DNA of 57,415 bases from Macrostomum lignano (Eukaryota): positions 1-57,415 of the forward strand of contig NIVC01003190.1 in the NCBI GenBank assembly GCA_002269645.1, written 5' to 3'. Of the stretch, positions 36,901-55,879 are shown in pieces (position 1 is the first letter of the stretch; every line of letters starts with the position of its first letter). The position numbers and the translations under genes were made by a program. The notes under the pieces were generated by a model. The model was not told where the DNA came from. It did no database searches and saw only the letters and a program-made list of their open reading frames with translations.

Positions 36901-39900
36901 GGTATCTGAAATTAACAACATATTTGTTATAGCTAAAAAATTCCCCCAAGCCAGCAGATGGCGGCTGCTGACTTACCGCAGCACCAGCGGGTTGCCTAGA
37001 CGTTCAGTTTTCCACTCTCCCCAGTCGAATGAGAACAGCGCCCTCTCGAACTTCCAGTTTTCCAGACCGATTGAGAATTTGTAGTCGCATGGATCAACAT
37101 AGGCCCAGGCTTTGACGGAGATCTGCTTGATTTTGAAGTCCAAACTCATGCAGCACTCGATGCCCATGCAGTGCTCGTTGAGGTAGCACTTCAGCGGGTC
37201 CGGAATGAAGTCGGGCAGCGTAAGGCCGGGACAAACTGAAATTTTTGCACGGCAGTGGAATCAAAATTTAGAGAACGTAATTCAAAGAGCTTGCATTCAC
37301 CCTGCCAGTTTTTTTATGAACTATTCGACAATTGCATTGATAATATCTGATATGTAGGTATCTAGGTTCCTATGCGGTGCTGTACGATCGTAAAAGTTAA
37401 TCTTTTCTTATTTCAAGTTGGCTTACTCTGAGAGTTAAAATACCTAACTAGACTTCAGTCTAAGCATGTGGTTCTGCAAAATAGAGTCTTTGAAAAAGTC
37501 TAATACCCTTTGGGCTCTCCGGCGAGCAGTTGGAATGCGTGGCGATGATGCCTTCAAGCCGCAGGTGCCGCAGCACAGCTCCGATCGCGCTCTCTGTGAT
37601 GCTTCCGCCCAACTCCTTGACGAAGTCACCAATGGAGCCGCCTGGCAGGCTGATGGACGCATTGGGATTGCAGATCGGAATCGGGATGGCGAAGTTGTTG
37701 AGGAAGGCCACGGGTGTCAAAGTGTCACCCTCGATTTTAACCTGCAGCTCAAGGTCCACGAAGTAGAGTTTCTTGACCGGATCCCTATCGATCTTAAAAC
37801 TGCGGGGCAGAGAGACACATCAGTTTTTATGTCAGCTCCGAATGTGCTTCTGAAGAGAAAAAGGAAAAAATCCAACCTGACGAAAATGACCTTGCCAAGG
37901 TCGAAGGATTCTCTACGGCCCCAGTCGTATCGGAACAAAGACTTGCTCAGCGTCATCTTCTCAAAGCGAATCAGCAGCTTGTAGTCGCACGGGTCAACAG
38001 AAACGGCCAGGGCGAAGGCCTTCGGAGCGATGAGCAGGTTGAGCTCCGCGCAGCAGCTCAGCATGCGGCAGTCGGATGAGAGGTCGCAGTAAGTGCCCGG
38101 GACAAATCTGGATGGCGCGTTTCCCGACGTCTTGAACAGCGGGCAGTCTGGAATTTTGGTTTTATACTGACATGAATTTATTGAGTTCATGCATAAAAAA
38201 ATCAGTACGCTCGTAGTGATGTTCTCACGGTTAAAAAATCCAGTTCTATTCTCGCATTTCGACTCAAAGTCAATGAGGTCTCCAATCCCCAGGTGTCTGA
38301 GCACAGCCTGCACGGCTTCGTCCGTGATCTTCTGCACACCTGTCTCCGCTAGGTGCCTGATAAAGTCCTTCACCTGGCCGCCTCCTGGCAAGCTTATAGA
38401 AGCGTTCATGTTGCAGCCCACTTGCGGCACCATGGAGTTCTCAAGCAGCACAAAGTCGGTGCGGAATGAGTCGATGGTGAGGCTGAGCTTCAGGTCCACG
38501 AGGAACAAGCGCCGATCACTGTCCTTGCGAATTGAGTAGCTGCAATTGAAGGTTAATGTGCCAGGTTACTTACTTCTGAAGAAAATAGCTTATTTAAATT
38601 CGTGACGCGATTTCCGTTAATTATCGAATAATCTCAGTAGCCTTGATTTCACATTTCATTGGAATAGCATAGCAACACAGATATCCACTTCAGACAGCAT
38701 CTGATTTTCAGGGTCTTAGCTAGCGCTTTTAGTTTGGGGCGCCAGCACCAAAGGCGCCAGCACCAAAGGCGCCAGCACCAAAGGCGCCAGCACCAAAGGC
38801 GCCAGCACCAAAGGCGCCAGCACCAAAGGCGCCAGCACCAAAGGCGCCAGCACCAAAGGCGCCAGCACCAAAGGCGCCAGCACCAAAGGCGCCAGCACCA
38901 AAGGCGCCAGCACCAAAGGCGCCAGCACCAAAGGCGCCAGCACCAAAGGCGCCAGCACCAAAGGCGCCAGCACCAAAGGCGCCAGCACCAAAGGCGCCAG
39001 CACCAAAGGCGCCAGCACCAAAGGCGCCAGCACCAAAGGCGCCAGCACCAAAGGCGCCAGCACCAAAGGCGCCAGCACCAAAGGCGCCAGCACCAAAGGC
39101 GCCAGCACCAAAGGCGCCAGCACCAAAGGCGCCAGCACCAAAGGCGCCAGCACCAAAGGCGCCAGCACCAAAGGCGCCAGCACCAAAGGCGCCAGCACCA
39201 AAGGCGCCAGCACCAAAGGCGCCAGCACCAAAGGCGCCAGCACCAAAGGCGCCAGCACCAAAGGCGCCAGCACCAAAGGCGCCAGCACCAAAGGCGCCAG
39301 CACCAAAGGCGCCAGCACCAAAGGCGCCAGCACCAAAGGCGCCAGCACCAAAGGCGCCAACACCAAAGGCGCCAGCATCAAAGGCGCCAGCACCAAAGGC
39401 GCCAGCACCAAAGGCGCCAGCACCAAAGGCGTCAACGTTTGTCACCCGATTGTGGAGCTTGCATGCACTATCTTTTCAAATACAACAGCTTACATAATCT
39501 GCAGAGGCGAGCCAATATTGAAAGTCTCCACTTGGCCCCACTCATAATAGAACAGAGTCTGGTTGTAGTGCAGGTTATTGAAACCAATGGAGAACCGGTA
39601 CTCGCACGGATCCAGAATCAGCCACATCAGCGCTGTCGGTTTAAACACTTTAAAGTCCAGCTCGGCGCAGCAGGTGACGCCCATGCAGAACTCGTTCAGG
39701 TGGCAGCGGACCTGGCTGGGCAGGCGCGGCAGGTGGAACACCCTGGGGCAACCTGTGGAATCGAGTTTGAGGATAAAGTGCTTCTAGTGAACTTTCTATA
39801 GCTGGAAATGACATTCAATTTATTCTGAACAGAATTTAGCATCAATAGACATCTGACTCTTGTACGAGCGTAGTGACTTCTAAAAGTAAATTAACTTCTT

Positions 39901-42900
39901 ACTGTGTAGGTTAGCAGTGGAATAATGCGTGGTTGGTAATAGTGGTTAATGTGTCGGACTCACGACTCGGGGTTCGATTTCCGATCCTACTGGAACAATC
40001 TGTTTCCTTGAGCAAGACACTTAACTATGCATTGCTTCAGTTCACTCAGCTGTAAAATGGGTGCCAGCATTAGCTGGGGTAATTAAGAGTGTGTGACCCC
40101 CCAGTCATTGGACTGAACAGCCGTGCACAGCCTTCAGATGTGCCGCGCAATGACTGCGACTGAGCTGTCAGTTGCACATCTGCCCATTGGGGCAGGCGTA
40201 ATTAATTATGATTAAAGAAGCTTAATGATTTACTATGTCATGAGGTAAATGTCAGTTCACAGCGAAGACTCACGACTGTCCCAGCCATTATTGAATGTGT
40301 TTGACGGCAATGCGCACTCTGGAGGATTAAAGAAGGCCTTCTGCAGGCCGAACCTTCGCACCACCGCCTCAAAGGCTGTCTGCAGCGCCGCCTCCGAGGC
40401 CTCGTTGCCGAGCAGTTTGGCGAAGTCGCCAAGCGAGCCGCCTGGCAGAGCGCCGGTGAAGTTCCGATGGCAGAATGGCTGCGGCACCACCGTGTCCTTC
40501 AGCAGCTTGACTGTGAAGTCGCAATCTCCTTCAGTGAAGCACACGGACAGGTCGAAATCTAGCTTCACGTAGTCCTTGCCAACTCGATCCACGGAGTAGC
40601 TGAAAAACAAATTACGGTCAGACGTATTTTCGCTCTGAGAAAAAGACAATGTCAATTTTTACTTTTCAGCAAAGTAAAACTTGATTTACTGAATTAAATG
40701 ATAAACAAACCAACTGAAACTTGGTTCAATTAAAGCATCGAACTGAATTAGTTACTAAAGGAGAACACATTAAGGGGTTGTAGCCTGGTGGTTAGAGCGT
40801 CGAACTTACGAATTAAAAGTCAGGGGTTCGATTAAGAATCCCACTGGAACAATTTGTGTCCTTGAGCAAGACAACTCTGCATTGATTCAGTTCACTCAGC
40901 TGTAAAATGGGTACCGGCATTACCTGAGGTGGTAACTGAGGGTGTGTGTGGCGACCCCAAGTTCTTGGACCAAAAGAAAGGCATTACTTGCCCTCCCCTG
41001 AGCAGGGCGTGCGGATACGTACGAGCTACGCAGTCAAACGCACAGGCACACACTCACACGGGAGTTTACAGCAGCCCTAAATTTATTTATCGTTAAGCAT
41101 GCATAATTCACTGTGCCTTGGTGTTTGGCTCTCAAGGGCGTTAATTGCAGGATCAGACCCGAGCTGAGATTCCAATTTAGCCTTATTAGGTGGTAATTGA
41201 GGGTGTCTGTGGCGACCCCCAGTTCTTGGACCAAAAGCAGCTGTACGCAGCCTTTAGATGCGCCGCGCAATAGCTGCGGCTGAGCTGTCGGTTGCACATC
41301 TTCCCATTAGGGCAGGCGCAGTCAATTAATATTACTATTTACATCAAATCTCAATTTGACTCACTCCAATCGAACGGCCTTGTTGCCAATCCACTGGGAC
41401 TTTTTCTGGCCCCAATGAGCTTCCAACAGGGATGTGTTGAAGTGCAGCGCACCAATGCCAATCGAGCTGGTGTACTCGCACGTGTCCAGCAGAATCCAGG
41501 CCTTGGCGTGGTAGTTGAGAAAGCTGAGATCGAGTTTGCTAGTTTTGAAGGCAAAGTCCAGACAGCACTCGAGGCCCATGCAGTTGTCTGCAACTCGGCA
41601 CTGCAAATTGGACGGCAGCTGCGGCAGGCGCACGTGCGGACAGGCGGTGAAATTGCTCTGTCTGGCGCACCGGCCCTTGGAGATGATCCTGTTCAGTCCC
41701 GTCCTGGTGAGCAGGATCTCCGCCGCCTTATCCAGCGCCGCCTGGCTGGCCGAAGTTCCGAGCTCGCGGAGGAAATCCTCGAGCTTGTCGGTGTTGCCCG
41801 GCAGGATTCGGTGCCAGTCGTTGCCGCAGAAAGGCACCGGCACGGGCACGCGATTGAGCACACTGATGTAGTCCAGTAGGCATGAAGACGAACCCGGGCA
41901 GATCGCCAGCTCCAGGCTGAACAGCGGCGCCTCATTGCTGGTTGGATTCTCGTTAAATCGGTACCTGGGATTCGGAATGCGAGTTCAGAGCAATAGTATA
42001 TGAGTCGATGCAAGAACTCAATAACCTGCTAAACGAAGATGTAAGCTCGAATATTAACTCACTTAAGCTTCAGGGCTCCAACATTTTGTAGAAATTCCTT
42101 GCCGTATGGAATCGCAAACAGAACCTTGTTGAATGTCAGCGAGTTGAAACCGAAGCTGAATGTTAAAGTACACGCGTCCATTTTTGCCCAGCCTGTAATA
42201 TTCGTCGGTAATTAGTCAGAAGGGACTATTCTTTCAGAAATACTATTGAAAATTAGCACTCACCTTTCAAGTACTTTGCAATCTCAAAACCTCTGATGGA
42301 AGCCTCCAGTCCCATGCAGCACTCGAACTTGGTGCAGTTCGGGGACACCTGGCAAAAGACGCGACTTCTCAGTGCACCAGGAATTGCGGCAACTCCAGTT
42401 GCAGCGGCCCGTTGCGACACTTGCGGAAGTGCAGTTCCGCCAGTTGCACCAGCACCGTTTTATTGCTAGGGTCGGAAATCTGCACCCCACGCTCCGTCAG
42501 CCCCTCTAGCAGCACCTCGTTGGAGACCTTGTTCGGCAGGGTGCAGGCCTTGGCATTGAAGACGTCGGCAAAGTCCCCCAGACCCATCGTCTGCAGCAAC
42601 TCTTCCCACCACTTCTGCATCATGGCGTTGATGACCGACGTAGAAGTCTTTTGAAGCAGGGACTTCAGGTGGTTCTTGTTCAGCATCTGCTGCCAGTTCA
42701 TCTTCGGCCAGGTGACCAAGCCATCTTTGCAGATTGGCAGCGGCAGGACGAGCTCCTGGAGTACCTGGATGTCCACCTCGCAGCTCGAGCTGGATGAGCA
42801 CGCGGACAGGCGAAGGCTGAACATTAGGGCTTCCTCCGACTTGGCGAACTGGTACGACAGCCGCAGCTTCATTTTCAGCACTTTAAGGAACTGCAGAGCG

Positions 42901-45900
42901 TCTGGCAGCCAGATTTCTTTCTCTTCGAAATCTGAAGTAAGATTGGCGAAAATCTTTGTTTAGGAAAAGCTAATCATTGATAGAGTACTGCTAGTTATTT
43001 TTATGTATCGGGAAACTAACAAGGTTACCTTCAGGAAAAAATCTGTTGAAATCGATTGTGTACACTATGGTCTTCACGTGCTTCATCTTGAGCCCGAACT
43101 CCAGCTTCTTGCTGCTGCCGCACGGGTCCAGCCTGGCCCAGAGTTTTGCCGCTTTGCGGAACACCTTCACCTTGAGGTCAATGCAGCACTCCACCGAGAG
43201 GCAGCTCTTGTCGAACTGACAGTAAACTGGTCTCGGCAGCGACAGCTGCAGAAGCGGACAGCCTGTGATGTTATTAAAATGAGATGAAGTATGAGCTACC
43301 GTCTGTATTTCCTAAAATATTGAATTCTAGAGCAAGCTTTACTCACGGGAATCACTCTGCTTCATCCTATCGATAAGACTGGCCTTTGGCATGACTTCCA
43401 CCTCCGATTTGCCAAAGCCTTTCTTAACGAGCTCGTTACGCAGCTCTTCCTCAGACATCAGGTAGGGGCTCTGGCACGGCTGATCTTCCAGTACATCCTT
43501 GATCGTCAGCAGTAGTTTATCCATTTTCTCCCTGGTCTTTTCGAAATGATTTTGAATCGCCGGAGCCTCTAGAAAGGCAACGACGTAGGCGAGTCTCAGG
43601 CGGCGCAAGCTGAACCTATCAAAGATTTTGTCGACGCCCAGCTTTTTTGGAAAGTCGAGAATGCTGGTTACCGCTTTGCCCACGTTGCCGAGAATGGAGC
43701 TGCGCGGCAGGCGAACTGAGTCAGCTTCCACGTTGGAAAAGAGATCGACTTCGTCAGTTTCAAGCGGCTCCACGGATTCCTCGGTTGCTTCTCTTTCAGG
43801 GCTGGTGTCCTCATCCTTCCGGCCTTTTAATCCCACGATCGCCCCTTCGGCGATCACGTTACCAAGTATCACCAGCTTGTAGTCGTCGCATTTCTGCTCC
43901 CACTTTGGCATTTTCATCACTCGAGGCTCAAGGTACTTGCTGGAATCCAGGTAGCGACCAGGGCCAGCCCTGGCGGATAGGTGAATGTGGTTTTCGCACT
44001 TGGGTGTCGAGCCAGTCACGCCGAGCTTGTCCCCAGCGCTCAGCTCCAAGCCCTCAGTTGGCTGGCTGTTTCCTTGCTCCATATCGAAGACTGGCAAGTC
44101 GCTGGCTTCAAATCGACCGTCATCCATCTCGAACTTCACGTTCTCCAAGATAAAGTGAAACTTTTCCATGCTGAATCCTTTCGGAACAATCACGAGCTGG
44201 TTAGAACCCTCGGGACCTCGGTAGTACTCGCCTTTAAACGGCACAACGACCTTTTCGCCAGGTTCCACGGCCAGATCCACGCCAGGATGATTCCACAGTT
44301 TGTCAGCGTCTGATGGATAGAAGCCATCGGATTTGCAACCTTTCCCGGCGAGCCGGTAAGTCCTTTGAAACTCGGAGTGCGCCCTCGGACCCATGATGGC
44401 TTCCGCTATGCTCCTGATCCTCTTCCAGCTCTCCTTGGCTCCTTGGTAGGCCTCCTTGAAGCCGCGAATAATCTGCAGAATTCCTTGGATCTGGTTTTCA
44501 AGTGGGCCGAAGGCTCCACGGAAGCCGCTCAACGGTTCCATCAACAGGTCCTGGACATCCTTTAGGAGGCCCACTAGCTTCATTGTTTCCTGAATGAAAA
44601 ATTTTGTTTTTTAAACCAAATTCACTGACATGTATAGACCTCAGTAATTTATTCATTACTGAAAATGTAGACGATCAAATGAACGATGTGGGTACTGTCG
44701 GTCGTACCGGTAAATTACTTTGAAAACAAAGTTACCAACAGCAACAACAACACAATCAAAACACGCTGTTAGTTAGTTTTTAAAGACTCAGAAGCATCAC
44801 AGGCAGTGGAGCGAAAGGCTTGAGCTTTTTGTAGAAAAATAAAACGAACTTGAGGTTGCACTTAAATATACTGCATTTGACAAGCAGAAATTCTCAGAGT
44901 CATTCTTTGCTAATGCATTTAGCGACTGAATTTTCTGTGAGCTACAAGGCTCGGTACTAAACTATAAGATAGTCGTAGACATTTTAGCTGTAAACTTTTG
45001 ACTATGCCAACCGGAGCTTCTACTTTCCCCACTTCGCAACTGATAAGAATTCTGTTCTATATTAGGAATTCAGATTTTCTTGGAAAAGCAGCAAATTCTG
45101 CACCAGGCGCAGATCGCTGAAATAGCTATAAGCGAGGCAGATAACAAGCCTGGTCCAGGGCTTCTATAGCGGAAATTTGATCGTGAAAAGTGGCAGGTAA
45201 ACAGAAAACAGGTGTCTCACTGAGTCCGACATTGCGCTAAACGGTCTCGTGCCGTTCTGTTGCGAGCCCTCCAGCGCTAAGACGGCCCGACGGCCTCTCT
45301 CCATGTGGCGCAGGGCCTCGGCGAATTCCGCCTTCAAGTTGCGATAGTGATCGGTCAGGTTCCACCAGTAGGGCTTCTCCTCTGAAACAAGCATTGTGAA
45401 GTATTCGTTAAGAAATGTTTTTTATGTTTTAGGTGCGACTTCTATAGATATAGCAGAACAAATTGCTCACCTTTCAAAAAGAAACACGCCTCAAGAGTTC
45501 GATTTTTGGCGTCGAGAAACCCGTTCACCCCCATTCCGATTTGGAAGAACGACTTGAATGCGTTCATGATGGCCTCCTTCGGGGAGCGGAAAATCCTTGG
45601 GAATATTTTCACCAGCAGATCCAAACCCTCCTTAGTTTGCTTTGCAGACATCGGGATTTGGTTCTCGATCGCGTCGTGTAGGGTCTAATTATTGGAATTC
45701 GGATCAGAAGCTTATCACACTTTAAACTATACATTTGAAAGTCGAATAACTGATTTCACTCAAAGTGCTATAAACTCACGTAATAGAATCCTGTAACATC
45801 GGCTTTGATATCGTTAGCCAGAGTGGCCATCTTCTTCAGTACCGCGAACAGCGGCCTCACGTGAGACGGCAACTCAAGCGGGTCGACCTCGGCCAGGATA

Positions 45901-48900
45901 TCCACCGCTTGTACAATCGATTTGGCGAGATCTGACACCACGTATGGCAGCCTTCGAAACTCCTTGCGCAAGTTTTTAGTTATGCTAAACACCTGGTTGG
46001 GATTTGAAGGTTCAAAGAGCTTTCGAAATCCGTTAATTGCGTCCTTGACACCTTTGTAGAGCGCTCCAATCGTCCGGTCGTAAAGCTTCACCAAATCCTG
46101 CACGCTGTTGACTCCGAACTCCTTCAGAATGCTGATCTTGTACTCAACACCGCCTCGAAAGCAGACTCTGGCCAGAAAGAAGTCAATGTGAATGCCAATT
46201 ACGCCCAGATGTCCTCTAGCGAAAACCTCGTCGTGCACGTTTACCGTAAGCTGACCCTCGATCAAGGCTGCATTTTTAAGGGCGTGTTTGGAATAAGTAG
46301 CATCTGATTGTTTCTATTATATACAGTATATAAGAATCAGCAAGGGTCAGCGTACCCAGCTTCACAATGAGCTCATTCAAGGCGGTCATTCCGAACGAGC
46401 CGCCGATTTTAGTGCTGCCGATCATCTTTTGCCAGTTGACGCCTGGAGCCGCCAGCTTCACATGGATTCCCTTCCACATTTTCTCGAGCACGCCTTGCAC
46501 GCTGCGCTTGGAGATATTGTGCGACATCAGCAGAGTTCCGTTATCAATTCTACAACACGGAGCGCGAATATATAGCAAAATAAATTATTCTTGATTTAAA
46601 CAAATTACATATAGGGTTAAAGAACTCGTTTTGAACGCACCCTTCAACAAATTCGCGATGCATGGTGACAATATCCTTAGTTTTTGACGGATGAGCCTCG
46701 TACATCAGGCTGGCCTCGTATCGAACGTGCTCGTCAGAGTCAGTTAGTGCGGCAGTGAGGATTGTTGACGCTGCCTGAAAACAGGATGCAAAAAACAAAA
46801 ATAAAAGTCCCGCTTGAGGAGAGCAATCAGACTGTTTACTACAAAGACAAACCTCAATGGTCTCGAATTTGCGCATAGAATGCAGTCCAGAACGCTTCCA
46901 CAGAGTGGGTGCCGACGACTCGTTAGAGTAGGACTGGATGACCTCAAATGAACTCTCAAAAGCGGCATTTCCTAAACTGTCAATCAGCGAAGACTTCAAG
47001 AATATGAACCTTTCGAATGTTGCATCGTCCATGACGTCCCTCTTTGACCGGTGATGGTACGGATCTGAAAGCGAGGCTTTTAAATTGTCAATTTTGAAGC
47101 TCTTTATGAAAGCAATTTCTGATATTTTTACTCACCGAAGACTTCGGTCAACTTTTCCAGCTGGCTAACTATGCTCTGAGCCATGGCCTTCTGCTGCTGG
47201 TTGCCGTAGCTTTGCATCAGGCGACAGACGGTGCCGAGGGCAAGCACGCAGCGGTGGTAAGTGTCCGGGTCGTTGATATCGGGCTGACCCTCGGGATTGA
47301 ACACAAACGTGACCAGAGTATTCACCAGGGCCTAAAACCATTTTTAAACAGCATCATTTTTATCATGGCACCCGGATGTTGGTACTCTTTGAGTCATGAA
47401 CGACTTAAGTAGAAGGTAATAACAATATCTGGTAATAATAAATCACAACACGAAACTAAAAAACAAATGTAATTGTGAACTCTGCACTCTGCAATATTAT
47501 GCTCTTCCAATTTTTTCCTACGAACAATACTTGGCTCATGTGCAATTCGAAAATCCAGAAGGAGAAATATTGCGAAGTTTAATGCTAAAATTGAAAATTT
47601 TGCTTTTTGATAACGCATTTTGCAACACGAGTCACGAGTTCAAAGCCCTACTTAAGCGGACTACCGTATTCTACGATTTCGATACGGCATTCCAAATTCT
47701 TCAGCTCACGTTTGCTGGGGCGTTCTTTCTTGTAGCCAGAAACACGAGCACCCTCTGGACGAGCTCCGGATGTCTGCTCCTGGACTTGAGAACCAGTTTA
47801 TTGATGATCAAGTCAGATGCAACGGAGCCAACACTGCAGACTGCATCCAGCATGGCCAGGAACCTCTTCTTCTCCAGGTCCTTTGTGCTGAAATGTAGGT
47901 AGATCAAGCAGCAAGTTACATGTGTGCTCGCTGCGGTTGATCTCAAAAGCAACAGCAGGTATCCCAATAAAAGCGCGAGCTTACATATTGCCATACGGCC
48001 GGTCCAAGTACATGGAAGCAATTTCATTCAGCTCTCGCTGAGACAGTCCTTGCAATATTTGAACCAAGTTGTGGTAGCAGTCGATAGCGTCGGATTTGGC
48101 TAAAATTTAGTGGCGTAAGACAAAAATAAAGTCAAGCAAAAGCTTTTCAACTTGACAAATAATTTAGCTAAGCAAACTCACATTCCGCAGTGTCGGTGGC
48201 TATACAGGTGAGGTTGGAGTCGATGCCGCGCCGAACGTCTCGTAAATCGTAGTCGGACTGGAACACCTCATGCAGCTGAAACACGGATAGTGAGTTGGCA
48301 TGTACTGCGATGCTCAAAACGCTAACTGGCAACTCCATGAGCTCACCCTGGTCTGGTTAATATTCTCAGACGCCAGCTTTGCTGGTCTCTGTTTGATCGG
48401 TGAAGCGTCTCGAACTTCAGATAGCGTGAACTCCGATTTTGCCGTGGTGGTCACCCTGGACACACTTGTCGGATCTTCGTGCTCCCTGTCCATCACCACC
48501 CGTGGGCCCTTCCTGACCTTGACGCCCGAATCGAAGCTGAAATATTGAGATTAGAAAAACGTTCCTTATTTTAGAGTACCTGTTTACATGTATGAGGATG
48601 CTCATGAGGCAGATAGACGCTTCGCTGAACTCACCCTTCAGGTTGATCATTAAAGAAGTGGATCTCATCGTGTATGAAAGTTCTGTCAGGCAGACGTGTG
48701 ACGTGATTGTAGTGCATGGTCTGGAATAATTAGAGAATGACAGTAGCCTTTATAGCAGGAGGGCATTCGGGCCGACTGGAAGATCGTCCAGCCTCCAGTC
48801 GCACGCCAAAAATGGCGCCCAACTGCAATACGCTTCTCCAAAATGCAAAAGCGCATTTCCAATCTTGATGATGGAAAGAAGCTCCATTCTAGCCGCATCT

Positions 48901-51720
48901 TTTACAGGCATATGCATACCTTCCAAGCCATAGGGTACCAAAAGACGGGGGTAGCTACAAGAGACAGGGAAATCAAGAGGCAGGGTCGACTTAAAAGACA
49001 GGGGCGCCCACCAAGAGACAGGAGCACCCACCTAAGAGACAAATTCAGCCACCAAGAGACAGTAGCACCCACCTAAGAGACAAATTCAGCCACCAAGAGA
49101 CAGGAGCACCCACCTAAGAGACAAATTCAGCCACCAAGAGACAGGAGCACCCACCTAAGAGACAAATTCAGCCACCAAGAGACAGTGTCAGCCACCAAGA
49201 GACAGGAGCACCCACCTAAGAGACAAATTCAGCCACCAAGAGACAAATTCAGCCACCAAGAGACAAATTCAGCCACCAAGAGACAGTAGCACCCACCTAA
49301 GAGACAGTGTCAGCCACCAAGAGACAGTAGCACCCACCTAAGAGACAAATTCAGCCACCAAGAGACAGTAGCACCCACCTAAGAGACAGTGTCAGCCACC
49401 AAGAGACAGTAGCACCCACCTAAGAGACAGTGTCAGCCACCAAGAGACAGTAGCACCCACCTAAGAGACAGTGTCAGCCACCAAGAGACAGTAGCACCCA
49501 CCTAAGAGACAGTGTCAGCCACCAAGAGACAGTAGCACCCACCTAAGAGACAGTGTCAGCCACCAAGAGACAGTAGCACCCACCTAAGAGACAGTGTCAG
49601 CCACCAAGAGACAGTAGCACCCACCTAAGAGACAAATTCAGCCACCAAGAGACAGGGGCACCCACCTAAGAGACAGTGTCAGCCACCAAGAAACAGGGGC
49701 ACCCATCTAAGAGACAGGGTCGCCCACCAAAAGACAGTTGCTCCAATCAAGAGACAGGGGTGCCACTCAAGACACCCCAAGAGTTTCGCCTTCTCCTCCA
49801 GTACAAATCGTGTGTACGCCTGTGCTGCAAAGAATTGTCATAAAAGTGTGAAAGCTTACATGGGTGACATTTCTGTGCACGTTGTTCCCATGAACTCCGC
49901 GTCTGGTCTTTGAAATCTCGGTGTGATACCGACCGATGGTGCGATTCTTGGTGCTCCACTCGTGAGTGTTGTGGAACTTGTACTCCTGAATTGGGTTTAC
50001 ATAAAGCAGCTTTGAAGTGTTATTCAATGAAATTTTGGCGGTGAGAGGAAATATATGCATGGAAACTGAAATTTTCGGGCCTACGTCATCGTGTCCAAGA
50101 AGCGCTGTGACCATGGCCTTCTTCACAGTGGCCAAGAACGCAGTCTCGTCATGCGGATACCGGACATGGCTGACCCGGCCGGCTGGGTCCAGGTGGAAGC
50201 TGAACCAGCCATCCAGCTTGACGTCGCTGCCCTGACCCGCAGTCTGGCCTCGGCCGTTCCTGGCGTGCAGCTTTGTCAACGTCAGGGCCAGGTGCTGAGA
50301 TCCATCCGGCTCCTTGCCTTGCAGCTGGATGGAAAACTGAAAACCGGGGATCGATGTTAGGGTTGAAACAGCTGAGGCAATGACATTCAAGAAAATGAGA
50401 TAAAAGCAGCAAAGTTGCGAGTTCATTGATTCAGCCATATCGATGCTGGAACATTTCTGATCGGAGCAAAGACTCGGCTATAAACCAACCCCGAAACTCG
50501 GCCATCAACCAACCCCGAAACTCGGCCATCAATCAACCTCAAGACTCGGCCATCAACCAACCCCAAGACTCGGCCATAAACCAACCCCAAGACTCGGCCA
50601 TAAACCAACCCGAGACTCGGCCATAAACCAACCCCGAGATTCGGCCGTAAACCAACCCCGAGATTTGGCCATAAACCAACCCCGAGCTTCGGGCATAAAC
50701 CAACCCCGAGCTTTGGCCATAAACCAACCCGAGCTTCGGCCATAAACCAACCCCGAGCTTCGGCCATAAACCAACCCGAGCTTTGGCCATAAACCAAGCC
50801 CGAGCTTCGGCCATGAACCAAACCCGAGACTCGGCCACAAACCAACCCCGAGCTTCGGCCATAAACCAAGCCCGAGACTCGGTCATAAACCAACCCCGAG
50901 CTTCGGCCATAAACCAAGCCCGAGCTTCGGCCATGAACCAAACCCGAGACTCGGCCACAAACCAAACCCGAGACTCGGCCATAAACCAAACCCGAGACTC
51001 GGCCATAAACCAACCCGAGCCCAATCCCGAGCTTCGGGCATAAATCAACCCCGAGCTTCGGCCATAAACCAACCCCGAGATTTGGCCATAAACCAAGCCC
51101 GAGACTCGGTCATAAACCAACCCCGAGCTTCGGCCATAAACCAAGCCCGAGCTTCGGCCATGAACCAAACCCGAGACTCGGCCACAAACCAACCTCGAGC
51201 TTCGGCCATAAACCAAGCCCGAGACTCGGTCATAAACCAACCCCGAGCTTCGGCCATAAACCAAGCCCGAGCTTCGGCCATGAACCAAACCCGAGACTCG
51301 GCCACAAACCAACCTTAAGATATTAAATTTTTTTTAACTGCAATTGATCAAAATTTCTTAACTTTCTCTTTAATCTTAATAAATTTAAATCAATATAGTC
51401 AATGGGTGATAAAAATTAAGCTACATGCATTATTACCTGTCTAGGTAAATATTAACGGTAATAAAAGCAGTTAGGTTGATTTTTAAAACTCCTACAGGTG
51501 CATACACGTCACTAAGCGATTGTACAATTGTTTCTACCTGGCCTGTGACGAACAGGTCACCGATGTCCTTGGTTTTCGTGTGCGTCTCCACATCGTACAC
51601 GTACTGCTTGCCCTCCTTGAAGGAGAACACGGACTCTGCCGGCTTCACAGCTGCCGCAGCGAGCAGCAGCAGAAGCGGCAGGCCCAGCAGGCTGATGCCG
51701 CCACCTCTGCTGGATGGCAT
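6617..51720 (-). CDS. Giant (~9,170 aa) multidomain type I membrane protein: LLTP/vitellogenin-N, M23/LECT2-like, 21x Cys-rich repeat, PAN, FN3 array, GH16-like, cadherin-like, EGF, TM; 68 exons, 4 apparent 1-bp frameshifts
   Basis: Hand-spliced GT-AG exons (minus strand, 5' to 3'): 51720-51538, 50336-50085, 49985-49860, 48720-48635, 48536-48347, 48275-48182, 48099-47985, 47887-47710, 47331-47136, 47064-46853, 46774-46641, 46549-46356, 46267-45780, 45684-45471, 45381-45221, 44589-43347, 43262-43029, 42931-42264, 42192-42063, 41964-41365, 40599-40274, 39752-39494, 38539-38229, 38147-37877, 37799-37507, 37235-36977, 36905-36751, 36486-36331, 36250-35989, 35915-35755, 35672-35535, 34947-34689, 34231-34071, 33817-33451, 32826-32663, 32137-30652, 30543-30380, 30293-29226, 26381-26031, 25952-25755, 25674-24607, 24529-24185, 24103-21346, 21245-20958, 20903-20689, 20500-20161, 20078-19784, 19696-19547, 19475-18602, 18505-17391, 17288-16953, 16867-15906, 15837-15684, 15345-15033, 14936-14673, 14580-14447, 14110-13578, 13497-13295, 13185-12940, 12872-11214, 11129-10921, 10845-10494, 10372-10150, 10025-9517, 9069-8890, 8737-8424, 8332-7665, 6920-6617. 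The sum is 27,518 nt; adding 4 restored bases gives 27,522 nt = 9,173 codons + stop, and phases match at each junction. A few boundaries (e.g. 46641, 36331) are less certain. Confidence 0.85.
6987..7400 (-). mobile_element. tRNA-derived SINE family B copy containing an internal tandem array
   Basis: Shares CAC..TCACAC..GTGTT..CAGCGGCCCT and TTCGTGCACAAGC(C/T)CTAAATT with the copies at 34323 and 35049; B-box-like GGTTTGATTCC on the minus strand. Confidence 0.6.
7017..7257. repeat. 34-bp tandem array (7 copies)
   Basis: Unit ACTTTCTAATCGTCAGGCATGTACACCCTGTGTA; copies 2 and 3 are 33 bp, copies 4-7 are identical. Confidence 0.95.
7679..8015 (-). CDS. Giant gene: two EGF-like modules and transmembrane helix
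   Basis: PCQNNGTC...YWCRCPVGWLGDRCE (EGF pattern), then DPCALLRCDPPLVC...CICPPGGDC, then hydrophobic WLVPTLIALGVALVLAGAIIGAVML followed by basic RSRLR. Confidence 0.9.
8530..8960 (-). CDS. Giant gene: cadherin-like/Ig-like domain
   Basis: NSAPVI...LLAVDPEDDPVVWEL...GQASLSADGLLVYRP...LVVTD resembles the AxDxD/GxxxYxP pattern of cadherin-like (Big_9-type) folds. Confidence 0.55.
9184..9445 (+). mobile_element. tRNA-derived SINE family A (CORE-like central domain)
   Basis: A-box TAGCCCAATGGTTAGAG, B-box GGTTCGCTTCCC, then TGTGTCCTTGAGCCAGACACTTAAC...CAGCTGTAAAATGGG, similar to the CORE-SINE motif; near-copies at 39927 and 40774. Confidence 0.85.
9960..20430 (-). CDS. Giant gene: array of ~17-18 FN3-like repeats
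   Basis: Recurrent W-x-x-F-x-D-P-E-S-G-I-x-x-Y...G and Y-F-V-x-V-x-A-x-N-x-A-G-L...D-x-T-P-P...G-x-V-x-D-G motifs (e.g. SDPESDIKEF, NDPESGVTHY, QDPESGISRY, RSVNNAGL). Confidence 0.8.
11600..12400 (-). CDS. Giant gene: concanavalin-A/GH16-like beta-jelly-roll domain with degenerate catalytic motif
   Basis: WDLHLERD...SGAIQAD...GASYSFKAQV...VVTSLVLWN...GDIDYV...LDFDPSAEFHNYTLHF...VEVDG follows GH16 motif order (L-x-L, SGxIxS, YG/F, ExDxE, FDPxxxFHxY, VDG). Confidence 0.6.
11686..11690 (-). other. Apparent 1-bp deletion frameshift 4 in giant gene (T5, expected T6)
   Basis: CAC TTT TTA GCA TAG stops; one extra T gives H-F-F-S-I-A-Q-D-T-G-Y-R-E-W-T-A-R-V-E-V-D-G, continuing into ORF 11167-11625. 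Confidence 0.75.
14026..14030 (-). other. Apparent 1-bp deletion frameshift 3 in giant gene
   Basis: Frame A gives GLNLQNGETYFAIVSGTTAL then stops; frame B gives HIITVRSSGVVI. One extra G (CTA GGT CAC) joins them into a normal FN3 strand. Confidence 0.8.
19390..19696 (-). CDS. Giant gene: PAN/apple domain
   Basis: SFLCAEDCLKQGDKCRAFNYHSVNKVCEL matches the PAN CxxxC...CxAFxY...CxL pattern across exons 48-49. Confidence 0.75.
22050..43262 (-). CDS. Giant gene: 21 tandem copies of an unrecognised ~190-aa cysteine-rich repeat
   Basis: Approximate consensus C-P-x(8-16)-C-x5-C-x4-C-C-x2-L...W-x2-[VLI]-D-P-C...G-F-E-x-W...W-G...L-x-Y...C-x(3-5)-C...L-P-x-P-x-C...W...N-R-L-G...Q-C; 21 C-x5-C-x4-CC cores counted. 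Confidence 0.88.
23812..23822 (-). other. Apparent 1-bp deletion frameshift 2 in giant gene
   Basis: Frame A gives LILNRLGLQFDDM; the repeat continues in frame B as HQQCEVDYLQ...CTPTKSCTGMECC. One extra base after ATG restores the LNRLG...QC linker consensus. Confidence 0.8.
26632..26671 (-). ncRNA. Minimal type I hammerhead ribozyme motif (inverted pLTR copy)
   Basis: Reverse complement is identical to 28414-28453: CC-CUGACGA-U-GUCC-loop-GGAC-GAAA-UGCA-UC-GG. Confidence 0.65.
26680..28227 (+). CDS. Penelope-like reverse transcriptase / GIY-YIG endonuclease, N-terminally truncated, 515 aa open
   Basis: LYGLCKVHK..PLRPIVS, SFDVVSLFTNIP, GCAMGSPLAP, YKRYVDDTF, LPFLD (RT motifs); GVVYKFVC...YIGKTKR...R..EH...LEALYI...PTLNNQ (GIY-YIG). 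Starts at TTG at the inversion junction, so there is no true start. Confidence 0.93.
   Translation: MNVLTHPILKNERSLQNFLRTYVKPHVSPEIFKVIVPNGSQPGQLYGLCKVHKDGHPLRPIVSMINTSEYELAKFLDNLIKPVIPSEHCVGSNKQFIESLSNTTINQTDRLYSFDVVSLFTNIPLDFTIELAADLVYEKTDPPPFSKATFKKMLKFATSGIFLFRDKYYRQIDGCAMGSPLAPTLANLCMAHWEKDWMALPCAPHFYKRYVDDTFAIFEDEAKKDEFFKLINSTHENIKFTAEGGGRRLPFLDIDVDATDETISTSVYRKPSFTGLMLRFDALCPRQWKTGLIRCFLHRAFSTCSSWRLFHNEVEILTNLLSYNGYPKNFVMKIVNSFLNDKLTEPNRMKVRDSTSECPLITLPYFGVCSIEFKKKLEKLLRKDLNTQIRVVFRTEKIAKFVCKLKSSVPRPLAAGVVYKFVCSEDQSISYIGKTKRHLYTRVREHWLKNSAINEHLLTCNSCCEAEPHEMIKAIDFCNRDHMLCLLEALYIKTKQPTLNNQLAMGGASRQLRIF
28414..28453 (+). ncRNA. Minimal type I hammerhead ribozyme motif in the 3' pLTR
   Basis: Core CUGACGA 28416-28422, extra U, stem II GUCC/GGAC (28424-27 / 28438-41), GAAA 28442-45, palindromic helix III AUGCAU, cleavage triplet AUC (cut after 28451); helix I only 2 bp (CC/GG). 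Confidence 0.7.
28525..29204. mobile_element. Possible solo LTR or unclassified insertion in intron 38
   Basis: GC-richer than the intron background; TGATGT (28525) ... ACATCA (29204) 6-bp inverted ends (the first 3 bases overlap the PLE call); TATAAATA at 28561; no TSD found. Confidence 0.3.
34323..34601 (-). mobile_element. tRNA-derived SINE family B, full length
   Basis: Minus strand starts GGGGAATCGTAGTCCAGTGGTCTAGCG (A-box) ... GGATTCAAAT (B-box-like); body nearly identical to 40983-41183. Confidence 0.8.
35049..35248 (-). mobile_element. tRNA-derived SINE family B-related copy
   Basis: Minus-strand CTCAGTGGTTAA (A-box) and GGGTTCCATTCC (B-box); shares body motifs with the copies at 6987 and 34323. 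Confidence 0.6.
38738..39427. repeat. 15-bp tandem array, 46 copies
   Basis: (GGCGCCAGCACCAAA)46; only two units carry a single substitution; lies in intron 22. Confidence 0.98.
39927..40200 (+). mobile_element. tRNA-derived SINE family A copy
   Basis: GGTTCGATTTCC B-box, TCCTTGAGCAAGACACTTAAC...CAGCTGTAAAATGGG; same body as the 9184 copy. Confidence 0.82.
40774..41320 (+). mobile_element. SINE family A copy interrupted by a family B fragment
   Basis: Head GGGGTTGTAGCCTGGTGGTTAGAG; body resumes at 41188 after the insert; 50-bp duplication 40927-40976 / 41188-41237. Confidence 0.82.
40983..41183 (-). mobile_element. SINE family B, 5'-truncated, nested in SINE A
   Basis: Aligns to about the first 190 bp of the 34323 copy (ATTACTTGCCCTCCCCTGAGCAGGGCG...TTTAGCCT) but lacks the tRNA head. 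Confidence 0.82.
42378..42383 (-). other. Apparent 1-bp deletion frameshift 1 in giant gene
   Basis: Frame A gives KCRNGPLQLELPQFLVH*; frame B gives LRSRVFCQVSPNCTKFECC. One extra C (CAA TTC CCT GGT GCA CTG AGA) joins them into repeat 2. Confidence 0.8.
43930..44370 (-). CDS. Giant gene: LECT2-like M23 zinc metallopeptidase domain
   Basis: HxxxD motif NHPGVD (44289-44275) followed by VVVPFKG; LSAGDKLG; HxH motif HIH (43989-43981) then YLDSSKYL. Same order and similar wording as LECT2 (HQGVD..VYAPFTG..KGEKLG..HVH..DPTAYL, recalled from memory). Confidence 0.82.
46641..51720 (-). CDS. Giant gene: signal peptide and vitellogenin/MTP-like (LLTP) lipid-transfer N-terminal domain
   Basis: Hydrophobic leader LLGLPLLLLLAAAAVKPAES; FKEGKQYVYDVET...WFSFHLDPAGRVSHVRYPHDETAFLATVKKAMVTAL (beta-barrel N-sheet pattern); helical LALGTVCRL, LIDSLGNAA, AALTDSDEHVRYEA, typical of the LLTP alpha-domain. 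Confidence 0.75.
48940..49775. repeat. Composite 20/21-bp (41-bp dimer) tandem array
   Basis: Alternating CCACCAAGAGACAG(T/G)(A/G)GCAC and CCACCTAAGAGACA(GTGT/AATT)CAG; degenerate at both ends; lies in intron 3. Confidence 0.95.
50470..51315. repeat. 24-bp tandem array (~35 copies) with a 120-bp higher-order period
   Basis: Unit CGAG(CT/AC)TCGGCCATAAACCAACCC with 23-bp variants; 51121-51195 is identical to 51241-51315; lies in intron 1. Confidence 0.95.
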
Positions 51721-54806: not shown

Positions 54807-55879
54807 ACCTTCAAGCCCCAGAAGAAGTACAAGGAGGGCACACTTCGCCACCAGCTGCACAAGAACGCTATGGCGTCTCTCAGCGCCGGCATCGATCTGA
54901 AAACTGCGGTGCAGCTGCCGCAGGGCGAGGATCTCAACGATTGGCTTGCAGTGCACGCTGTGGACTTCTACAACCGGGTGAATCTGATCTACGGCACGGT
55001 GGCGGAGGAGTGCACGGAGGTCAGCTGCCCCAAGATGAGCGGCGGCTCCAAGTACGAGTACCAGTGGGCTGACAAGGGCCAGTACAAGAAGCCGACCTCC
55101 CTGCCTGCCAGGGAGTACATCCACCTGCTCATGGACTGGGTTGAGACGCAGATCAGCGACGAGGAACTTTTCCCCACCGACTCCAGCCGGCCGTTTCCCA
55201 AGACCTACTTGGCCAGCGTTAAGAAGATTTTCACTCGCTTATTTCGAGTCTTTGTTCACGTCTATATTCACCACTTTGAGCACCTGGTGTCTGTTGGCGC
55301 CGTGAGTACTTGGGCGTTCAATTTCGGACATCTGGTATCAAGCGTTGCCTTCATTGACATAAGTTGTGCCGGCCATCCCAAGCTGCTTGACACTAGGGAG
55401 TGGCTCCCCAAACCCTACCCAAGGCAGTTCGTTCCCTCACTAACTGTGTTAACTGTTGACACTTTTACCTAAAAGCTCAGCCACATTAATTTGGGCCTCG
55501 TGCGCATCAATTGGCCTGGGGGTTTGTCGTGTGATTTCCGCCTGTGTGAAAGTCAAGGCCATTGAACACTCCGTGTGGATGCGTGCTTGCGTACAAACCA
55601 CCGTGTTCACGTTTGACATCGTTTGAAACGTACTTTATTGAACTTTCAACAATAATTATTTTTCAGGAAGCTCACGTGAATACCTGCTACAAGCACTTTT
55701 TCTACTTTGTGAACGAGTTCGCTCTGGTGGACAAGAAGGAACTGGAGCCGTTGGTGAGTCCTCATGTTTGACTGACAGGCGGAGCTATCTGCACTTATCC
55801 TGCTGTCCAGTAAATTGAACGAAACAAACATATGCGGTCTTAATTGCAGAAGGACATGACCATGAGAATGTGCCGGTAA
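54807..55879 (+). CDS. MOB3: MOB kinase activator 3-like; exons 54807-55301, 55667-55753, 55850-55879 (first coding exon not identified)
   Basis: [64 protein letters not shown]...[14 protein letters not shown]...[11 protein letters not shown]...ELEPL-KDMT. DWxAVHxVDFxNRxNLIYGT and YEYxWxD...YKKP indicate the MOB3 clade. GT-AG phase-0 introns; in-frame TAA upstream of acceptor CAACAG (54806). Confidence 0.92.
55484..55591 (+). mobile_element. SINE family B-related fragment in a MOB3 intron
   Basis: CATTAATTTGGGCC...GAAAGTCAAGGCCATTGAACACTCCGTGTG is reverse-complementary to motifs at 6987-7020 and 34510. Confidence 0.45.

What the first reader, a model, noticed from the sequence alone, without database searches (positions are those of the whole stretch)
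43930..44370. LECT2-like M23 peptidase domain embedded in an animal membrane protein
Seen: HPGVD and HIH with LECT2-like flanks. Established: M23 zinc ligands are H and D of HxxxD plus the second H of HxH, and all three are present. M23 is mostly bacterial; the best-known animal member, LECT2, is a small secreted, apparently inactive protein. The second catalytic His (YxHL motif) seems to be replaced here (FILENVK), as it is in LECT2. Inference: a zinc-binding, possibly peptidoglycan-binding rather than cleaving, module; it may show an ancestral context for LECT2.
Basis: partly seen in the sequence, partly recalled or inferred. Interest (0 to 1): 0.8.

Follow-up and report, generated by a model that had tools for sequence, protein, structure and literature searches.

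The report
Degenerate M23 domain in giant membrane protein
The motifs are real: one exon of a roughly 5,000-residue animal cell-surface protein encodes a bacterial-type M23 (LytM/LECT2-like) zinc-peptidase fold that has lost a catalytic histidine, so it is most likely a binding module, not an enzyme, in an uncharacterised family found in molluscs, acorn worms and amphioxus.

Summary
HPGVD (44275-44289) and HIH (43981-43989) lie on the minus strand in one 1,243-nt exon (43347-44589).

**The domain is M23.** The window sequence alone scores below Pfam's threshold (17.3 vs 28.7 bits). However, 97 homologues exist, and several pass the threshold over the full profile. The family profile hits LECT2, LytM and SpoIIQ in the PDB (E about 1e-5). 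An AlphaFold model (pLDDT 85.5) matches only M23 structures in its top 50.

**Catalytic residues.**
- H99, D103 and H201 align with the LytM zinc ligands.
- H199 aligns with catalytic H291.
- LytM H260 is replaced by Glu147 or Ile145, depending on the aligner. The nearby His143 does not align with it.
- Across the family the first ligand His is kept in only about a third of members, and no member has a full catalytic set.

The likeliest role is a non-catalytic extracellular binding module.

**Host gene.** It spans about 44 kb (7661-51720, minus strand). It encodes a signal peptide, a vitellogenin-N-like region, M23, a SAP-like motif, 21 Cys-rich repeats, fn3-like repeats, an EGF-like motif and a transmembrane helix.

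**LECT2 link.** A specific link is not shown. Scores to LECT2 and to bacterial M23s are equal. The "LECT2-like flank" also occurs in lysostaphin. The LECT2 disulfides are absent.

The parts
43879..44406 (-). M23/LytM-like domain (exon aa 60-235), including the conserved N-terminal lead-in segment and loop 1
   Evidence: Family profile A1 against the PDB; AF2 model pLDDT 85.5; Foldseek top 50 all M23; hhalign against LECT2 (E 1.3e-10) and lysostaphin (E 7.7e-8).
44275..44289 (-). HPGVD, the HxxxD motif. H99 and D103 align with LytM zinc ligands H210 and D214
   Evidence: Across the family D is conserved 56/59 but H only 18/57.
43981..43989 (-). HIH, the HxH motif. H199 aligns with LytM H291 (activates water); H201 aligns with H293 (zinc ligand)
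   Evidence: H201 is conserved 66/67 and H199 43/67 in the family.
44134..44154 (-). FILENVK, the strand that carries the second catalytic His (LytM H260, lysostaphin H329) in active enzymes. Here the position is Glu147 or Ile145. His143 lies 2-4 residues upstream
   Evidence: HMMER alignment gives H260 = E147. hhalign and MAFFT give I145. The column is D/E/T/N in the family, with His in 1/22.
44311..44325 (-). GFYPS, the loop-1 motif. Tyr89 aligns with lysostaphin Tyr270 and LECT2 Tyr26
   Evidence: hhalign. The role of Tyr270 is taken from PMC9662197. The position is aromatic (Y15/W4/F3) in the family.
44050..44133 (-). 28-residue insertion (FEMDDGRFEASDLPVFDMEQGNSQPTEG), longer than in any homologue aligned
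   Evidence: Alignments. Model pLDDT is 75-87 there. It was considered as a retained intron and rejected.
44353..44397 (-). Conserved family-specific lead-in (IFGPKxHxxFPRxxR; here IMGPRAHSEFQRTYR) preceding the M23 core
   Evidence: F5, G6, F13 and P14 are near-invariant in A1. pLDDT is 94 for block 11-20.
43347..44589 (-). The whole exon: helical N-terminal part, M23 domain, conserved PxWxQxCDDYKL motif, acidic linker and SAP-like motif
   Evidence: Acceptor ...ttcattcag|GAAACA and donor TCCC|GTGAGT were read from the sequence. The exon is collinear with homologues.
43357..43464 (-). SAP-like motif (YLMSEEELRNELVKKGFGKSEVEVMPKASLIDRMKQ)
   Evidence: It aligns with the SAP domains (PF02037) of homologues, E 2e-8 to 8e-8. 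The window sequence itself gave no Pfam SAP hit.
43263..43346 (-). In-frame 84-nt intron (GTGAGT...CACAG) containing the stop codons that end the listed ORF
   Evidence: homologue alignments skip exactly this segment and resume in the next exon.
22333..43262 (-). Array of 21 Cys-rich repeat modules of about 185 aa, spread over many exons
   Evidence: Iterated HMM search; AF2 pLDDT 87.6; no PDB structural match.
7679..7753 (-). Predicted transmembrane helix WLVPTLIALGVALVLAGAIIGAVML followed by RSRLR, preceded by an EGF-like motif at 7889-8014
   Evidence: Sequence. hEGF hit is weak. The region aligns with the C-terminal parts of the 5,000-aa homologues.
51646..51720 (-). Start codon and signal peptide MPSSRGGGISLLGLPLLLLLAAAAV, followed by a vitellogenin-N-like start (FSFKEGKQYVYDVE)
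7661..51720 (-). Approximate extent of the host gene in the window (about 44 kb, minus strand)
   Evidence: tblastn collinearity with Branchiostoma (5,244-5,363 aa), Haliotis (5,123 aa) and Saccoglossus (4,932 aa) homologues.

Best explanation
The region encodes an extracellular M23 (LytM-type) metallopeptidase-fold domain that is catalytically degenerate. In this gene it keeps the three canonical zinc ligands (H99, D103, H201), the first His of HxH (H199) and the loop-1 Tyr (Y89). It lacks the second catalytic His (LytM H260 / lysostaphin H329), where it has Glu147 or Ile145.

The domain is one module of a type-I membrane protein of roughly 5,000 residues: signal peptide, vitellogenin-N-like lipid-transfer region, M23, SAP-like motif, 21 Cys-rich repeats, fn3-like repeats, EGF-like motif, TM helix. 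This architecture belongs to an uncharacterised family in molluscs, hemichordates and cephalochordates.

Inferred mechanism: like LECT2 and the bacterial degenerate LytM factors (EnvC, NlpD, SpoIIQ), the domain uses the old substrate groove, probably stabilised by zinc in this copy, to bind a protein or peptide ligand rather than cleave it.

Shown: the fold, the homology, the residue states, the gene architecture and the family-wide degeneracy. Inferred: zinc occupancy, lack of activity, and the binding role.
For: Fold and homology.

Residue mapping to LytM. It agrees with the roles given in PMC9662197: the first His of HxH and His260 activate water, and Tyr204/Tyr270 stabilise the oxyanion.

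Family-wide degeneracy:
- First ligand His: 18/57 hits, 5/22 full domains.
- HxH first His: 43/67 hits.
- H260 column: His in 1/22.
- No member has the full catalytic set.
- Asp (56/59) and the last His (66/67) are almost invariant.

Extracellular placement: signal peptide, TM helix and Cys-rich/EGF/fn3 modules.

Precedent for non-catalytic M23 folds acting in protein-protein interaction: PMC9662197 (EnvC, NlpD, LECT2) and PMC5079751 (C. elegans LECT-2 as part of an extracellular receptor-ligand complex).
Against: - The window copy is among the minority that keep the whole zinc triad plus H199 and Tyr89, so residual or altered activity cannot be excluded. Glu is the general base in many other metalloproteases.
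I could not measure the zinc-site geometry, the position of H143/E147, or whether the groove is open.
- No expression, biochemical or ligand data exist for any family member.
- Alignment around the H260 position differs by two residues between methods.
Confidence: 0.62

Rival explanations
1. It is an active M23 endopeptidase: an animal peptidoglycan or Gly-Gly hydrolase tethered to the cell surface and acting as an antibacterial effector.
For: H99, D103, H201, H199 and Tyr89 are all present in this copy. An acidic residue (E147) or H143 lies on the strand that normally supplies the second catalytic His.
Against: No aligner places a His at the H260 position. The family does not conserve the first ligand His, the HxH first His or the H260 position, and no member has a complete set. 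That argues selection is not on catalysis. LECT2, which has the same residue state, is described as enzymatically inactive (PMC9662197, PMC13247027).
Confidence: 0.12
2. This family is the ancestral multidomain context from which the small secreted LECT2 was derived. On this view the two animal M23 groups are sisters, descended from one acquisition.
For: hhalign of the family against a LECT2 alignment gives probability 96.9, E 1.3e-10. The LECT2 profile scores family members (up to 19.3 bits) at least as well as bacterial M23s (3-10.6 bits locally, 17.4 bits best in the PDB). Both share the residue state 'triad kept, H260 lost'. Both are extracellular animal proteins.
Against: - The family profile scores bacterial M23s as high as or higher than LECT2.
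- Foldseek ranks 50 bacterial/phage M23 chains above LECT2.
- The shared flank also occurs in lysostaphin.
- None of the LECT2 disulfides (C7-C42, C18-C23, C81-C124; PMC13247027) is conserved; the family has its own Cys set.
- In an NJ tree LECT2 is not nested within the family (family 97%, LECT2 100% bootstrap).
- With only four bacterial sequences the sister-group question is unresolved.
Confidence: 0.2
3. It is a chance co-occurrence of HxxxD and HxH, or a dead exon or pseudogene with no functional domain.
For: The window sequence alone is below the Pfam threshold. It has no PDB sequence hit. The listed ORF ends in stop codons.
Against: - Homologues reach E 3.7e-51, and there is collinearity over about 44 kb.
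- There is a confident M23 model.
- The stops lie in a canonical in-frame 84-nt intron that the homologue alignments skip.
- No frameshift or internal stop occurs in the exon.
Confidence: 0.02

Closest known systems
LECT2 (leukocyte cell-derived chemotaxin 2; vertebrates, and LECT-2 of C. elegans)
   Same: - Animal, extracellular M23 fold.
- Zinc triad His/Asp/His retained (LECT2 His35, Asp39, His120; PMC13247027) and both His of HxH present.
- The H260-type catalytic His is lost (PMC9662197).
- Loop-1 Tyr is present.
- Profile-profile E 1.3e-10.
- LECT2 works as a ligand or adaptor in extracellular protein complexes (PMC5079751), which is the role proposed here.
   Different: - LECT2 is a free secreted protein of about 133 residues; this domain is one module of a membrane protein of about 5,000 residues.
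- The three LECT2 disulfides are absent, and the family has different conserved Cys residues (dom C24, C136, C173).
- There is a 28-residue insertion.
- Most family members lack the first zinc ligand.
- LECT2 forms a separate clade and is not the closest structure by Foldseek.
Bacterial M23B peptidases LytM and lysostaphin
   Same: - Best structural matches (LytM 2b13_A, E 6e-6, TM 0.61).
- HxxxD, HxH, loop-1 GxGxYP with Tyr, and the C-terminal DPxxYL motif all align.
   Different: - The second catalytic His (H260/H329) is missing.
- The host is eukaryotic and the protein multidomain.
- There is a family-specific N-terminal lead-in and a C-terminal PxWxQxCDDYKL extension.
- Sequence identity is about 15%.
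Degenerate LytM-domain factors (EnvC, NlpD, DipM, SpoIIQ, Csd2)
   Same: M23 fold with an incomplete catalytic or zinc-binding set, used for protein-protein interaction (PMC9662197). SpoIIQ, EnvC, DipM and Csd2 are among the hits. Family-wide loss of the first ligand His resembles these proteins.
   Different: They are bacterial cell-envelope proteins that regulate amidases or form sporulation channels. This particular copy still has the full zinc triad. There is no evidence of a shared partner type.
Large lipid transfer proteins (vitellogenin / apolipophorin / apoB; Pfam Vitellogenin_N)
   Same: Homologues carry Vitellogenin_N above threshold at the N-terminus (P0005 34 bits, P0004 29.9 bits). 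Window exons at about 47.3-45.5 kb and 51.6-50.1 kb align with those regions.
   Different: To my knowledge, known LLTPs are secreted lipid carriers without M23, SAP, the Cys-rich repeats or a TM anchor. The window exons themselves gave no Pfam Vitellogenin_N hit.

Membership tests
Peptidase M23 (Pfam PF01551 / MEROPS M23) fold superfamily | Pfam PF01551 match at the gathering threshold | tested here: not met
   The window exon scores 17.3 bits against a cutoff of 28.7, profile 2-48/96 only. Homologues P0001, P0002, P0009, P0013 and P0004 do pass over 3-96/96, so membership rests on transitive homology.
Peptidase M23 (Pfam PF01551 / MEROPS M23) fold superfamily | M23 beta-sheet fold | tested here: met
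   AF2 pLDDT 85.5, pTM 0.81. The Foldseek top 50 are all M23, probability 1.00, TM up to 0.61.
Peptidase M23 (Pfam PF01551 / MEROPS M23) fold superfamily | H(x)nD and HxH zinc-binding motifs | tested here: met
   HPGVD and NHIHL align with LytM H210/D214 and H291/H293.
Active M23 peptidases | Second catalytic His about 30 aa before HxH (LytM H260, lysostaphin H329) | tested here: not met
   The position aligns with Glu147 or Ile145. It is His in 1/22 family members.
Active M23 peptidases | Oxyanion-stabilising Tyr in loop 1 (LytM Y204, lysostaphin Y270) | tested here: met
   Tyr89 in GFYPS aligns with lysostaphin GYGPY270P. The role is taken from PMC9662197.
Active M23 peptidases | Bound zinc and glycyl-bond endopeptidase activity | not testable with these tools
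   Needs protein biochemistry.
LECT2 family | Small secreted single-domain protein (about 133 aa mature) | tested here: not met
   The domain is internal to a multi-exon gene collinear with membrane proteins of 4,900-5,400 aa.
LECT2 family | Three conserved disulfides C7-C42, C18-C23, C81-C124 (PMC13247027) | tested here: not met
   Only the C18 position aligns with a family Cys. C23, C42, C81 and C124 have no Cys counterpart.
LECT2 family | Zinc triad retained while the catalytic His is lost | tested here: met
   PMC9662197; PMC13247027.
LECT2 family | Closer to LECT2 than to bacterial M23s | tested here: inconclusive
   - Family profile: 28.3 bits (LECT2) vs 27.0 bits (LytM).
- Family profile: 19-33.6 bits (LECT2s) vs 37.4 bits (a bacterial protein).
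- hhalign scores: 57.0 (LECT2) vs 49.2 (lysostaphin).
- NJ tree: three separate clades.
Degenerate LytM (non-catalytic M23) domains | M23 fold with an incomplete catalytic residue set | tested here: met
Degenerate LytM (non-catalytic M23) domains | Acts through protein-protein or ligand binding | not testable with these tools
   No interaction data exist. The role is inferred by analogy (PMC9662197, PMC5079751).
Large lipid transfer proteins (host protein) | Vitellogenin_N domain at the N-terminus | tested here: inconclusive
   There is no Pfam hit in the window exons. Homologues pass the threshold, and window exons align with those regions (P0003 aa 118-240 at 40% identity, E 2e-24).

The most novel reading that the evidence does not exclude
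A bilaterian-wide family of giant cell-surface proteins couples a lipid-binding vitellogenin-type domain to a zinc-binding, non-cleaving M23 domain and to 21 copies of a repeat with no structural relative in the PDB. On this reading it acts as a membrane-anchored sensor of bacterial envelope components (peptidoglycan peptide plus lipid). It would also be the multidomain lineage from which LECT2 was released as a free domain.
Probability: 0.12. Interest if true: 0.75.

Novelty: new variant of a known kind. Interest (0 to 1): 0.45.

Why it matters
M23 domains are regarded as essentially bacterial: 97% of InterPro entries, with LECT2 called the sole described mammalian member (PMC9662197). Here the fold is a conserved module of an undescribed giant membrane-protein family spanning lophotrochozoans and deuterostomes. 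My searches found no paper on it.

The family provides a natural series of M23 domains at different stages of catalytic decay. Some keep the triad and some have lost it, while Asp and the last His stay nearly invariant. That series could show what degenerate M23 folds are selected for.

The family is also a candidate outgroup or relative for working out where LECT2 came from. On the other hand, databases already tag some homologues with PF01551 automatically, and the function is unknown. The result is therefore a solid annotation lead rather than a surprise of principle.

Tried and rejected
- **Word-indexed homologue search with the exon** found nothing. With the family profile it found only 11 hits. 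With LECT2 it found only amniote LECT2s. The exhaustive HMMER search was what worked.
- **phmmer of the exon or domain against PDB sequences** gave no hits. NCBIfam gave none.
- **His143 as a retained catalytic His.** BLAST pairs it with a LECT2 Tyr, but HMMER, hhalign and MAFFT place LytM H260 / lysostaphin H329 at E147 or I145. The column is Glu in most of the family. Rejected, although without coordinates it is not excluded sterically.
- **Stop codon at 43339-43341 as a sign of a pseudogene.** Rejected: it lies in a canonical 84-nt in-frame intron.
- **The 28-residue insertion as a retained intron.** Rejected: the only in-frame GT..AG pair would delete the conserved N-V strand and leave a loop shorter than in any homologue (reading).
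- **'LECT2-like flank' as a LECT2-specific synapomorphy.** Rejected: the same GxGxYP occurs in lysostaphin.
- **Direct measurement of the zinc-site geometry.** Not possible, because the model files are not exposed.
- **Zheng et al. 2016 (LECT2 structure).** Not held in the library. LECT2 facts come from PMC9662197 and PMC13247027.
- **Species identification.** The source organism could not be identified. The best homologues are only about 36% identical, and no eukaryotic nucleotide collection was available.
Full report
**1. What is at the coordinates**

The finding lies on the minus strand, inside a 414-codon open frame at 43339..44583. The frame reads:

...GKGCKSDGFYPSDADKLWNHPGVDLAVEPGEKVVVPFKGEYY...GFSMEKFHFILENVKFEMDDGRFEASDLPVFDMEQGNSQPTEGLELSAGDKLGVTGSTPKCENHIHLSARAGPGRYLDSSKYLEP...

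- HPGVD is aa 99-103 (nt 44275-44289).
- FILENVK is aa 144-150 (44134-44154).
- HIH is aa 199-201 (43981-43989).

The open frame is one exon, 43347-44589. It has an acceptor ...ttcattcag| and a donor |GTGAGT. The stop codons that terminate the listed ORF lie in an in-frame 84-nt intron (43263-43346). Homologue alignments skip that intron exactly.

**2. Is it an M23 domain?**

Taken alone, the window sequence is marginal:
- Pfam PF01551 gives E 0.0055 and 17.3 bits against a gathering score of 28.7, and covers only the N-terminal half of the profile.
- phmmer against PDB sequences finds nothing.
- BLASTP against human LECT2 gives 25 bits over 74 residues. I recalled the LECT2 sequence from memory and confirmed it as identical to 9non_B.

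The exhaustive HMMER search of 1.84 billion representatives changed the picture:
- It returned 97 relatives. The best are E 3.7e-51, at about 36% identity.
- They are 'uncharacterized' or 'hypothetical' proteins from three groups:
  - molluscs: Potamilus, Haliotis, Batillaria, Ylistrum, Mytilus, Pecten, Elysia;
  - hemichordates: Saccoglossus, Ptychodera;
  - amphioxus: three Branchiostoma species.
- Several pass the Pfam M23 threshold over the whole profile: P0013 43 bits, P0009 37.7, P0002 32, P0001 31.1, P0004 28.8.

A 22-sequence alignment of the domain (A1) was used as a profile against PDB sequences. It hits LECT2 (E 1.2e-5), LytM (3.2e-5), SpoIIQ (3.3e-5), LytU and other M23 chains.

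AlphaFold2 on that alignment gives pLDDT 85.5 and pTM 0.81. The blocks holding the two motif-bearing strands score 94-95. The Foldseek top 50 PDB hits are all M23 structures: LytM, lysostaphin, Csd1/2, DipM, EnvC, ShyA and SpoIIQ. The best is E 6e-6, with TM 0.61 normalised on the target. The refutation criterion 'no M23 profile or structure match' is therefore not met, and the domain is real.

**3. State of the catalytic machinery**

The roles of the residues are taken from the M23 review PMC9662197:
- Zinc is held by the His and Asp of H(x)nD and the second His of HxH.
- The first His of HxH, together with a His about 30 residues upstream (LytM His260, lysostaphin His329), activates the water.
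- A loop-1 Tyr (LytM Y204, lysostaphin Y270) stabilises the oxyanion.

The mapping onto the window protein is:

| Window residue | Aligns with | Source |
|---|---|---|
| H99 | LytM H210 (zinc ligand) | HMMER, |
| D103 | LytM D214 (zinc ligand) | HMMER, |
| H199 | LytM H291 (activates water) | HMMER, |
| H201 | LytM H293 (zinc ligand) | HMMER, |
| E147 | LytM H260 | HMMER, high posterior, |
| I145 | LytM H260 / lysostaphin H329 | hhalign and MAFFT, two residues earlier, |
| Y89 (GFYPS) | lysostaphin Y270 (GYGPYP) | hhalign; lysostaphin sequence verified against 4lxc_A, |

No method places His143 at the H260 position.

This copy therefore has the same state as LECT2. The triad and both His of HxH are kept, and the other catalytic His is lost. 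In LECT2 the zinc ligands are His35, Asp39 and His120 (PMC13247027), and LECT2 'lacks catalytic histidine' (PMC9662197).

I could not measure the geometry of the site. The tools return only confidence and secondary structure, not coordinates.

**4. What the family says**

| Position | All hits covering it | 22 full-length domains |
|---|---|---|
| First ligand His | 18/57 | 5/22 |
| Asp | 56/59 | 21/22 |
| First His of HxH | 43/67 | 9/22 |
| Last His | 66/67 | 22/22 |
| H260 column | not counted | D/E/T/N/S, His once |
| Loop-1 aromatic | not counted | Y15 / W4 / F3 |

No member has a complete catalytic set. This is the pattern of degenerate LytM domains, not of enzymes under selection for catalysis. 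The window copy, with P0002, P0005 and P0027, belongs to the minority that keep the triad.

The near-invariance of Asp103 and His201 when His99 is dispensable is unexplained. So is the conserved acidic residue (Glu in 13/22) in the column where the window has His143.

**5. The host gene**

tblastn of the homologues against the window shows one collinear minus-strand gene from about 51.7 kb to about 7.7 kb. In order it contains:
- A start and signal peptide MPSSRGGGISLLGLPLLLLLAAAAV at 51646-51720, followed by FSFKEGKQYVYDVE, a vitellogenin-N-type beginning.
- Exons at 50.3-45.5 kb that align with the Vitellogenin_N/HEAT-like region of homologues. Those homologues score above the Pfam threshold: P0005 34 bits, P0004 29.9 bits.
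- The M23 exon.
- A SAP-like motif at 43357-43464. Homologues have Pfam SAP hits with E about 1e-8.
- 21 copies of a Cys-rich module of about 185 aa between 43262 and 22333.
- A long fn3-like region. Its best conserved part is 34-38% identical to Branchiostoma and Saccoglossus proteins. The Saccoglossus homologue has an fn3 hit.
- An EGF-like motif at 7889-8014.
- A TM helix at 7679-7753 followed by RSRLR.

The M23 domain is thus predicted to be extracellular. 'Embedded in an animal membrane protein' is confirmed.

**6. Relation to LECT2**

Points in favour of a link:
- Profile-profile comparison of the family with a 15-sequence LECT2 alignment gives probability 96.9% and E 1.3e-10.
- The LECT2 profile sees bacterial M23s only weakly: 17.4 bits at best in the PDB, and 3-10.6 bits for the four bacterial sequences I had. 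It scores family members up to 19.3 bits.

Points against a specific link:
- The family profile scores a bacterial MepM/NlpD-like protein at 37.4 bits, LytM at 26.5-27 bits and LECT2s at 19-33.6 bits.
- hhalign scores to single sequences are 57.0 for LECT2 and 49.2 for lysostaphin.
- LECT2 is not among the 50 best structural matches.
- The 'LECT2-like' N-terminal flank is shared with lysostaphin.
- None of the three LECT2 disulfides is conserved.
- A neighbour-joining tree gives three distinct clades: family 97%, LECT2 100%, four bacterial sequences 96% of 100 bootstraps. LECT2 is therefore not nested within the family.

Whether the two animal groups are sisters cannot be decided with this sampling.

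**7. Mechanism proposed**

The proposal is inference by analogy:
- EnvC, NlpD, SpoIIQ and LECT2 use the M23 groove for protein binding (PMC9662197).
- C. elegans LECT-2 is a secreted component of a multi-protein receptor-ligand complex (PMC5079751).

I therefore propose that this domain is a ligand- or protein-binding module of the ectodomain. In this copy it is probably stabilised by zinc.

Peptidoglycan-peptide recognition is an attractive possibility, given the origin of the fold and the neighbouring lipid-binding domain. There is no evidence for it. A residual peptidase activity is the main rival, at about 0.12.

**8. Novelty**

Literature searches found no paper on this family or on M23 domains in lipid-transfer-type or SAP-containing animal proteins. 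Databases already attach PF01551 to some homologues automatically (for example P0014).

I rate it a new variant of a known kind: a degenerate M23 domain in a new, giant, metazoan membrane-protein architecture. Interest is moderate, at 0.45.

Noticed in passing
window 22333-43262, minus strand (e.g. the unit within 30564-32180): There are 21 copies of a Cys-rich module of about 185 aa. The core reads CPxFxxPxLPxxxxCxLxxxCxGxxCCxxLDL...SFxxWxxVDPC...GFExW. It is also repeated 9-12 times in Potamilus and Branchiostoma homologues. AF2 is confident (pLDDT 87.6, pTM 0.80: an N-terminal helix plus a nine-strand beta structure). Foldseek finds nothing in the PDB below E 0.08 (TM < 0.3), and Pfam finds nothing. 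It is possibly an undescribed extracellular fold.
   Followed up: partly
window 26680-28227, plus strand: A 515-aa ORF with reverse transcriptase (RVT_1, E 3e-9) followed by a GIY-YIG endonuclease domain (E 1.5e-6). This is the signature of a Penelope-like retroelement. It sits in an intron of the giant gene, on the opposite strand.
   Followed up: partly
window 43357-43464, minus strand: A SAP-like motif lies in what is predicted to be the extracellular part of the protein. Homologues have significant Pfam SAP hits. SAP is normally a nuclear DNA/chromatin-binding motif, so its presence here is odd.
   Followed up: partly
window 43795-43911, minus strand: Strongly conserved segments follow the M23 core: PxWxQxCDDYKLV, then G(L/I)xG(R/K)K(D/S)EDTSP. 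The second carries a conserved dibasic site that could be a proprotein-convertase cleavage site, as in other vitellogenin-type proteins. This is speculative.
   Followed up: no
window 44155-44157 (His143 column) and 44143-44145 (Glu147 column), minus strand: In the family the column of His143 is Glu in 13/22 sequences and acidic or His in 16/22. Asp103 and His201 stay nearly invariant even where the first zinc ligand is lost. This hints at an altered metal site or a conserved salt bridge, and remains unexplained.
   Followed up: partly
window 54870-55472, plus strand: An exon of a Mob1/phocein-family gene (PF03637, E 1.5e-60). It is a neighbouring gene on the opposite strand.
   Followed up: no
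window 38738-39431; 48996-49772; 50470-51314; 56417-57402; 7017-7257; 144-427: Long, fairly pure minisatellites. Examples are a 15-nt unit repeated 46 times at 99% match and 24/48/72-nt units over 845 nt. Several lie in introns of the giant gene and create spurious long ORFs in all frames.
   Followed up: no
window 3196-4044, plus strand: A 282-aa ORF with several hydrophobic helices and no Pfam match. It lies downstream of the giant gene on the other strand and may be a separate small membrane-protein gene.
   Followed up: no
whole window: The source organism is not represented in the protein collections. The best homologues are only 30-38% identical, and Branchiostoma and Saccoglossus are slightly closer than molluscs in the fn3-like region. 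Branchiostoma carries many paralogues of the family.
   Followed up: partly
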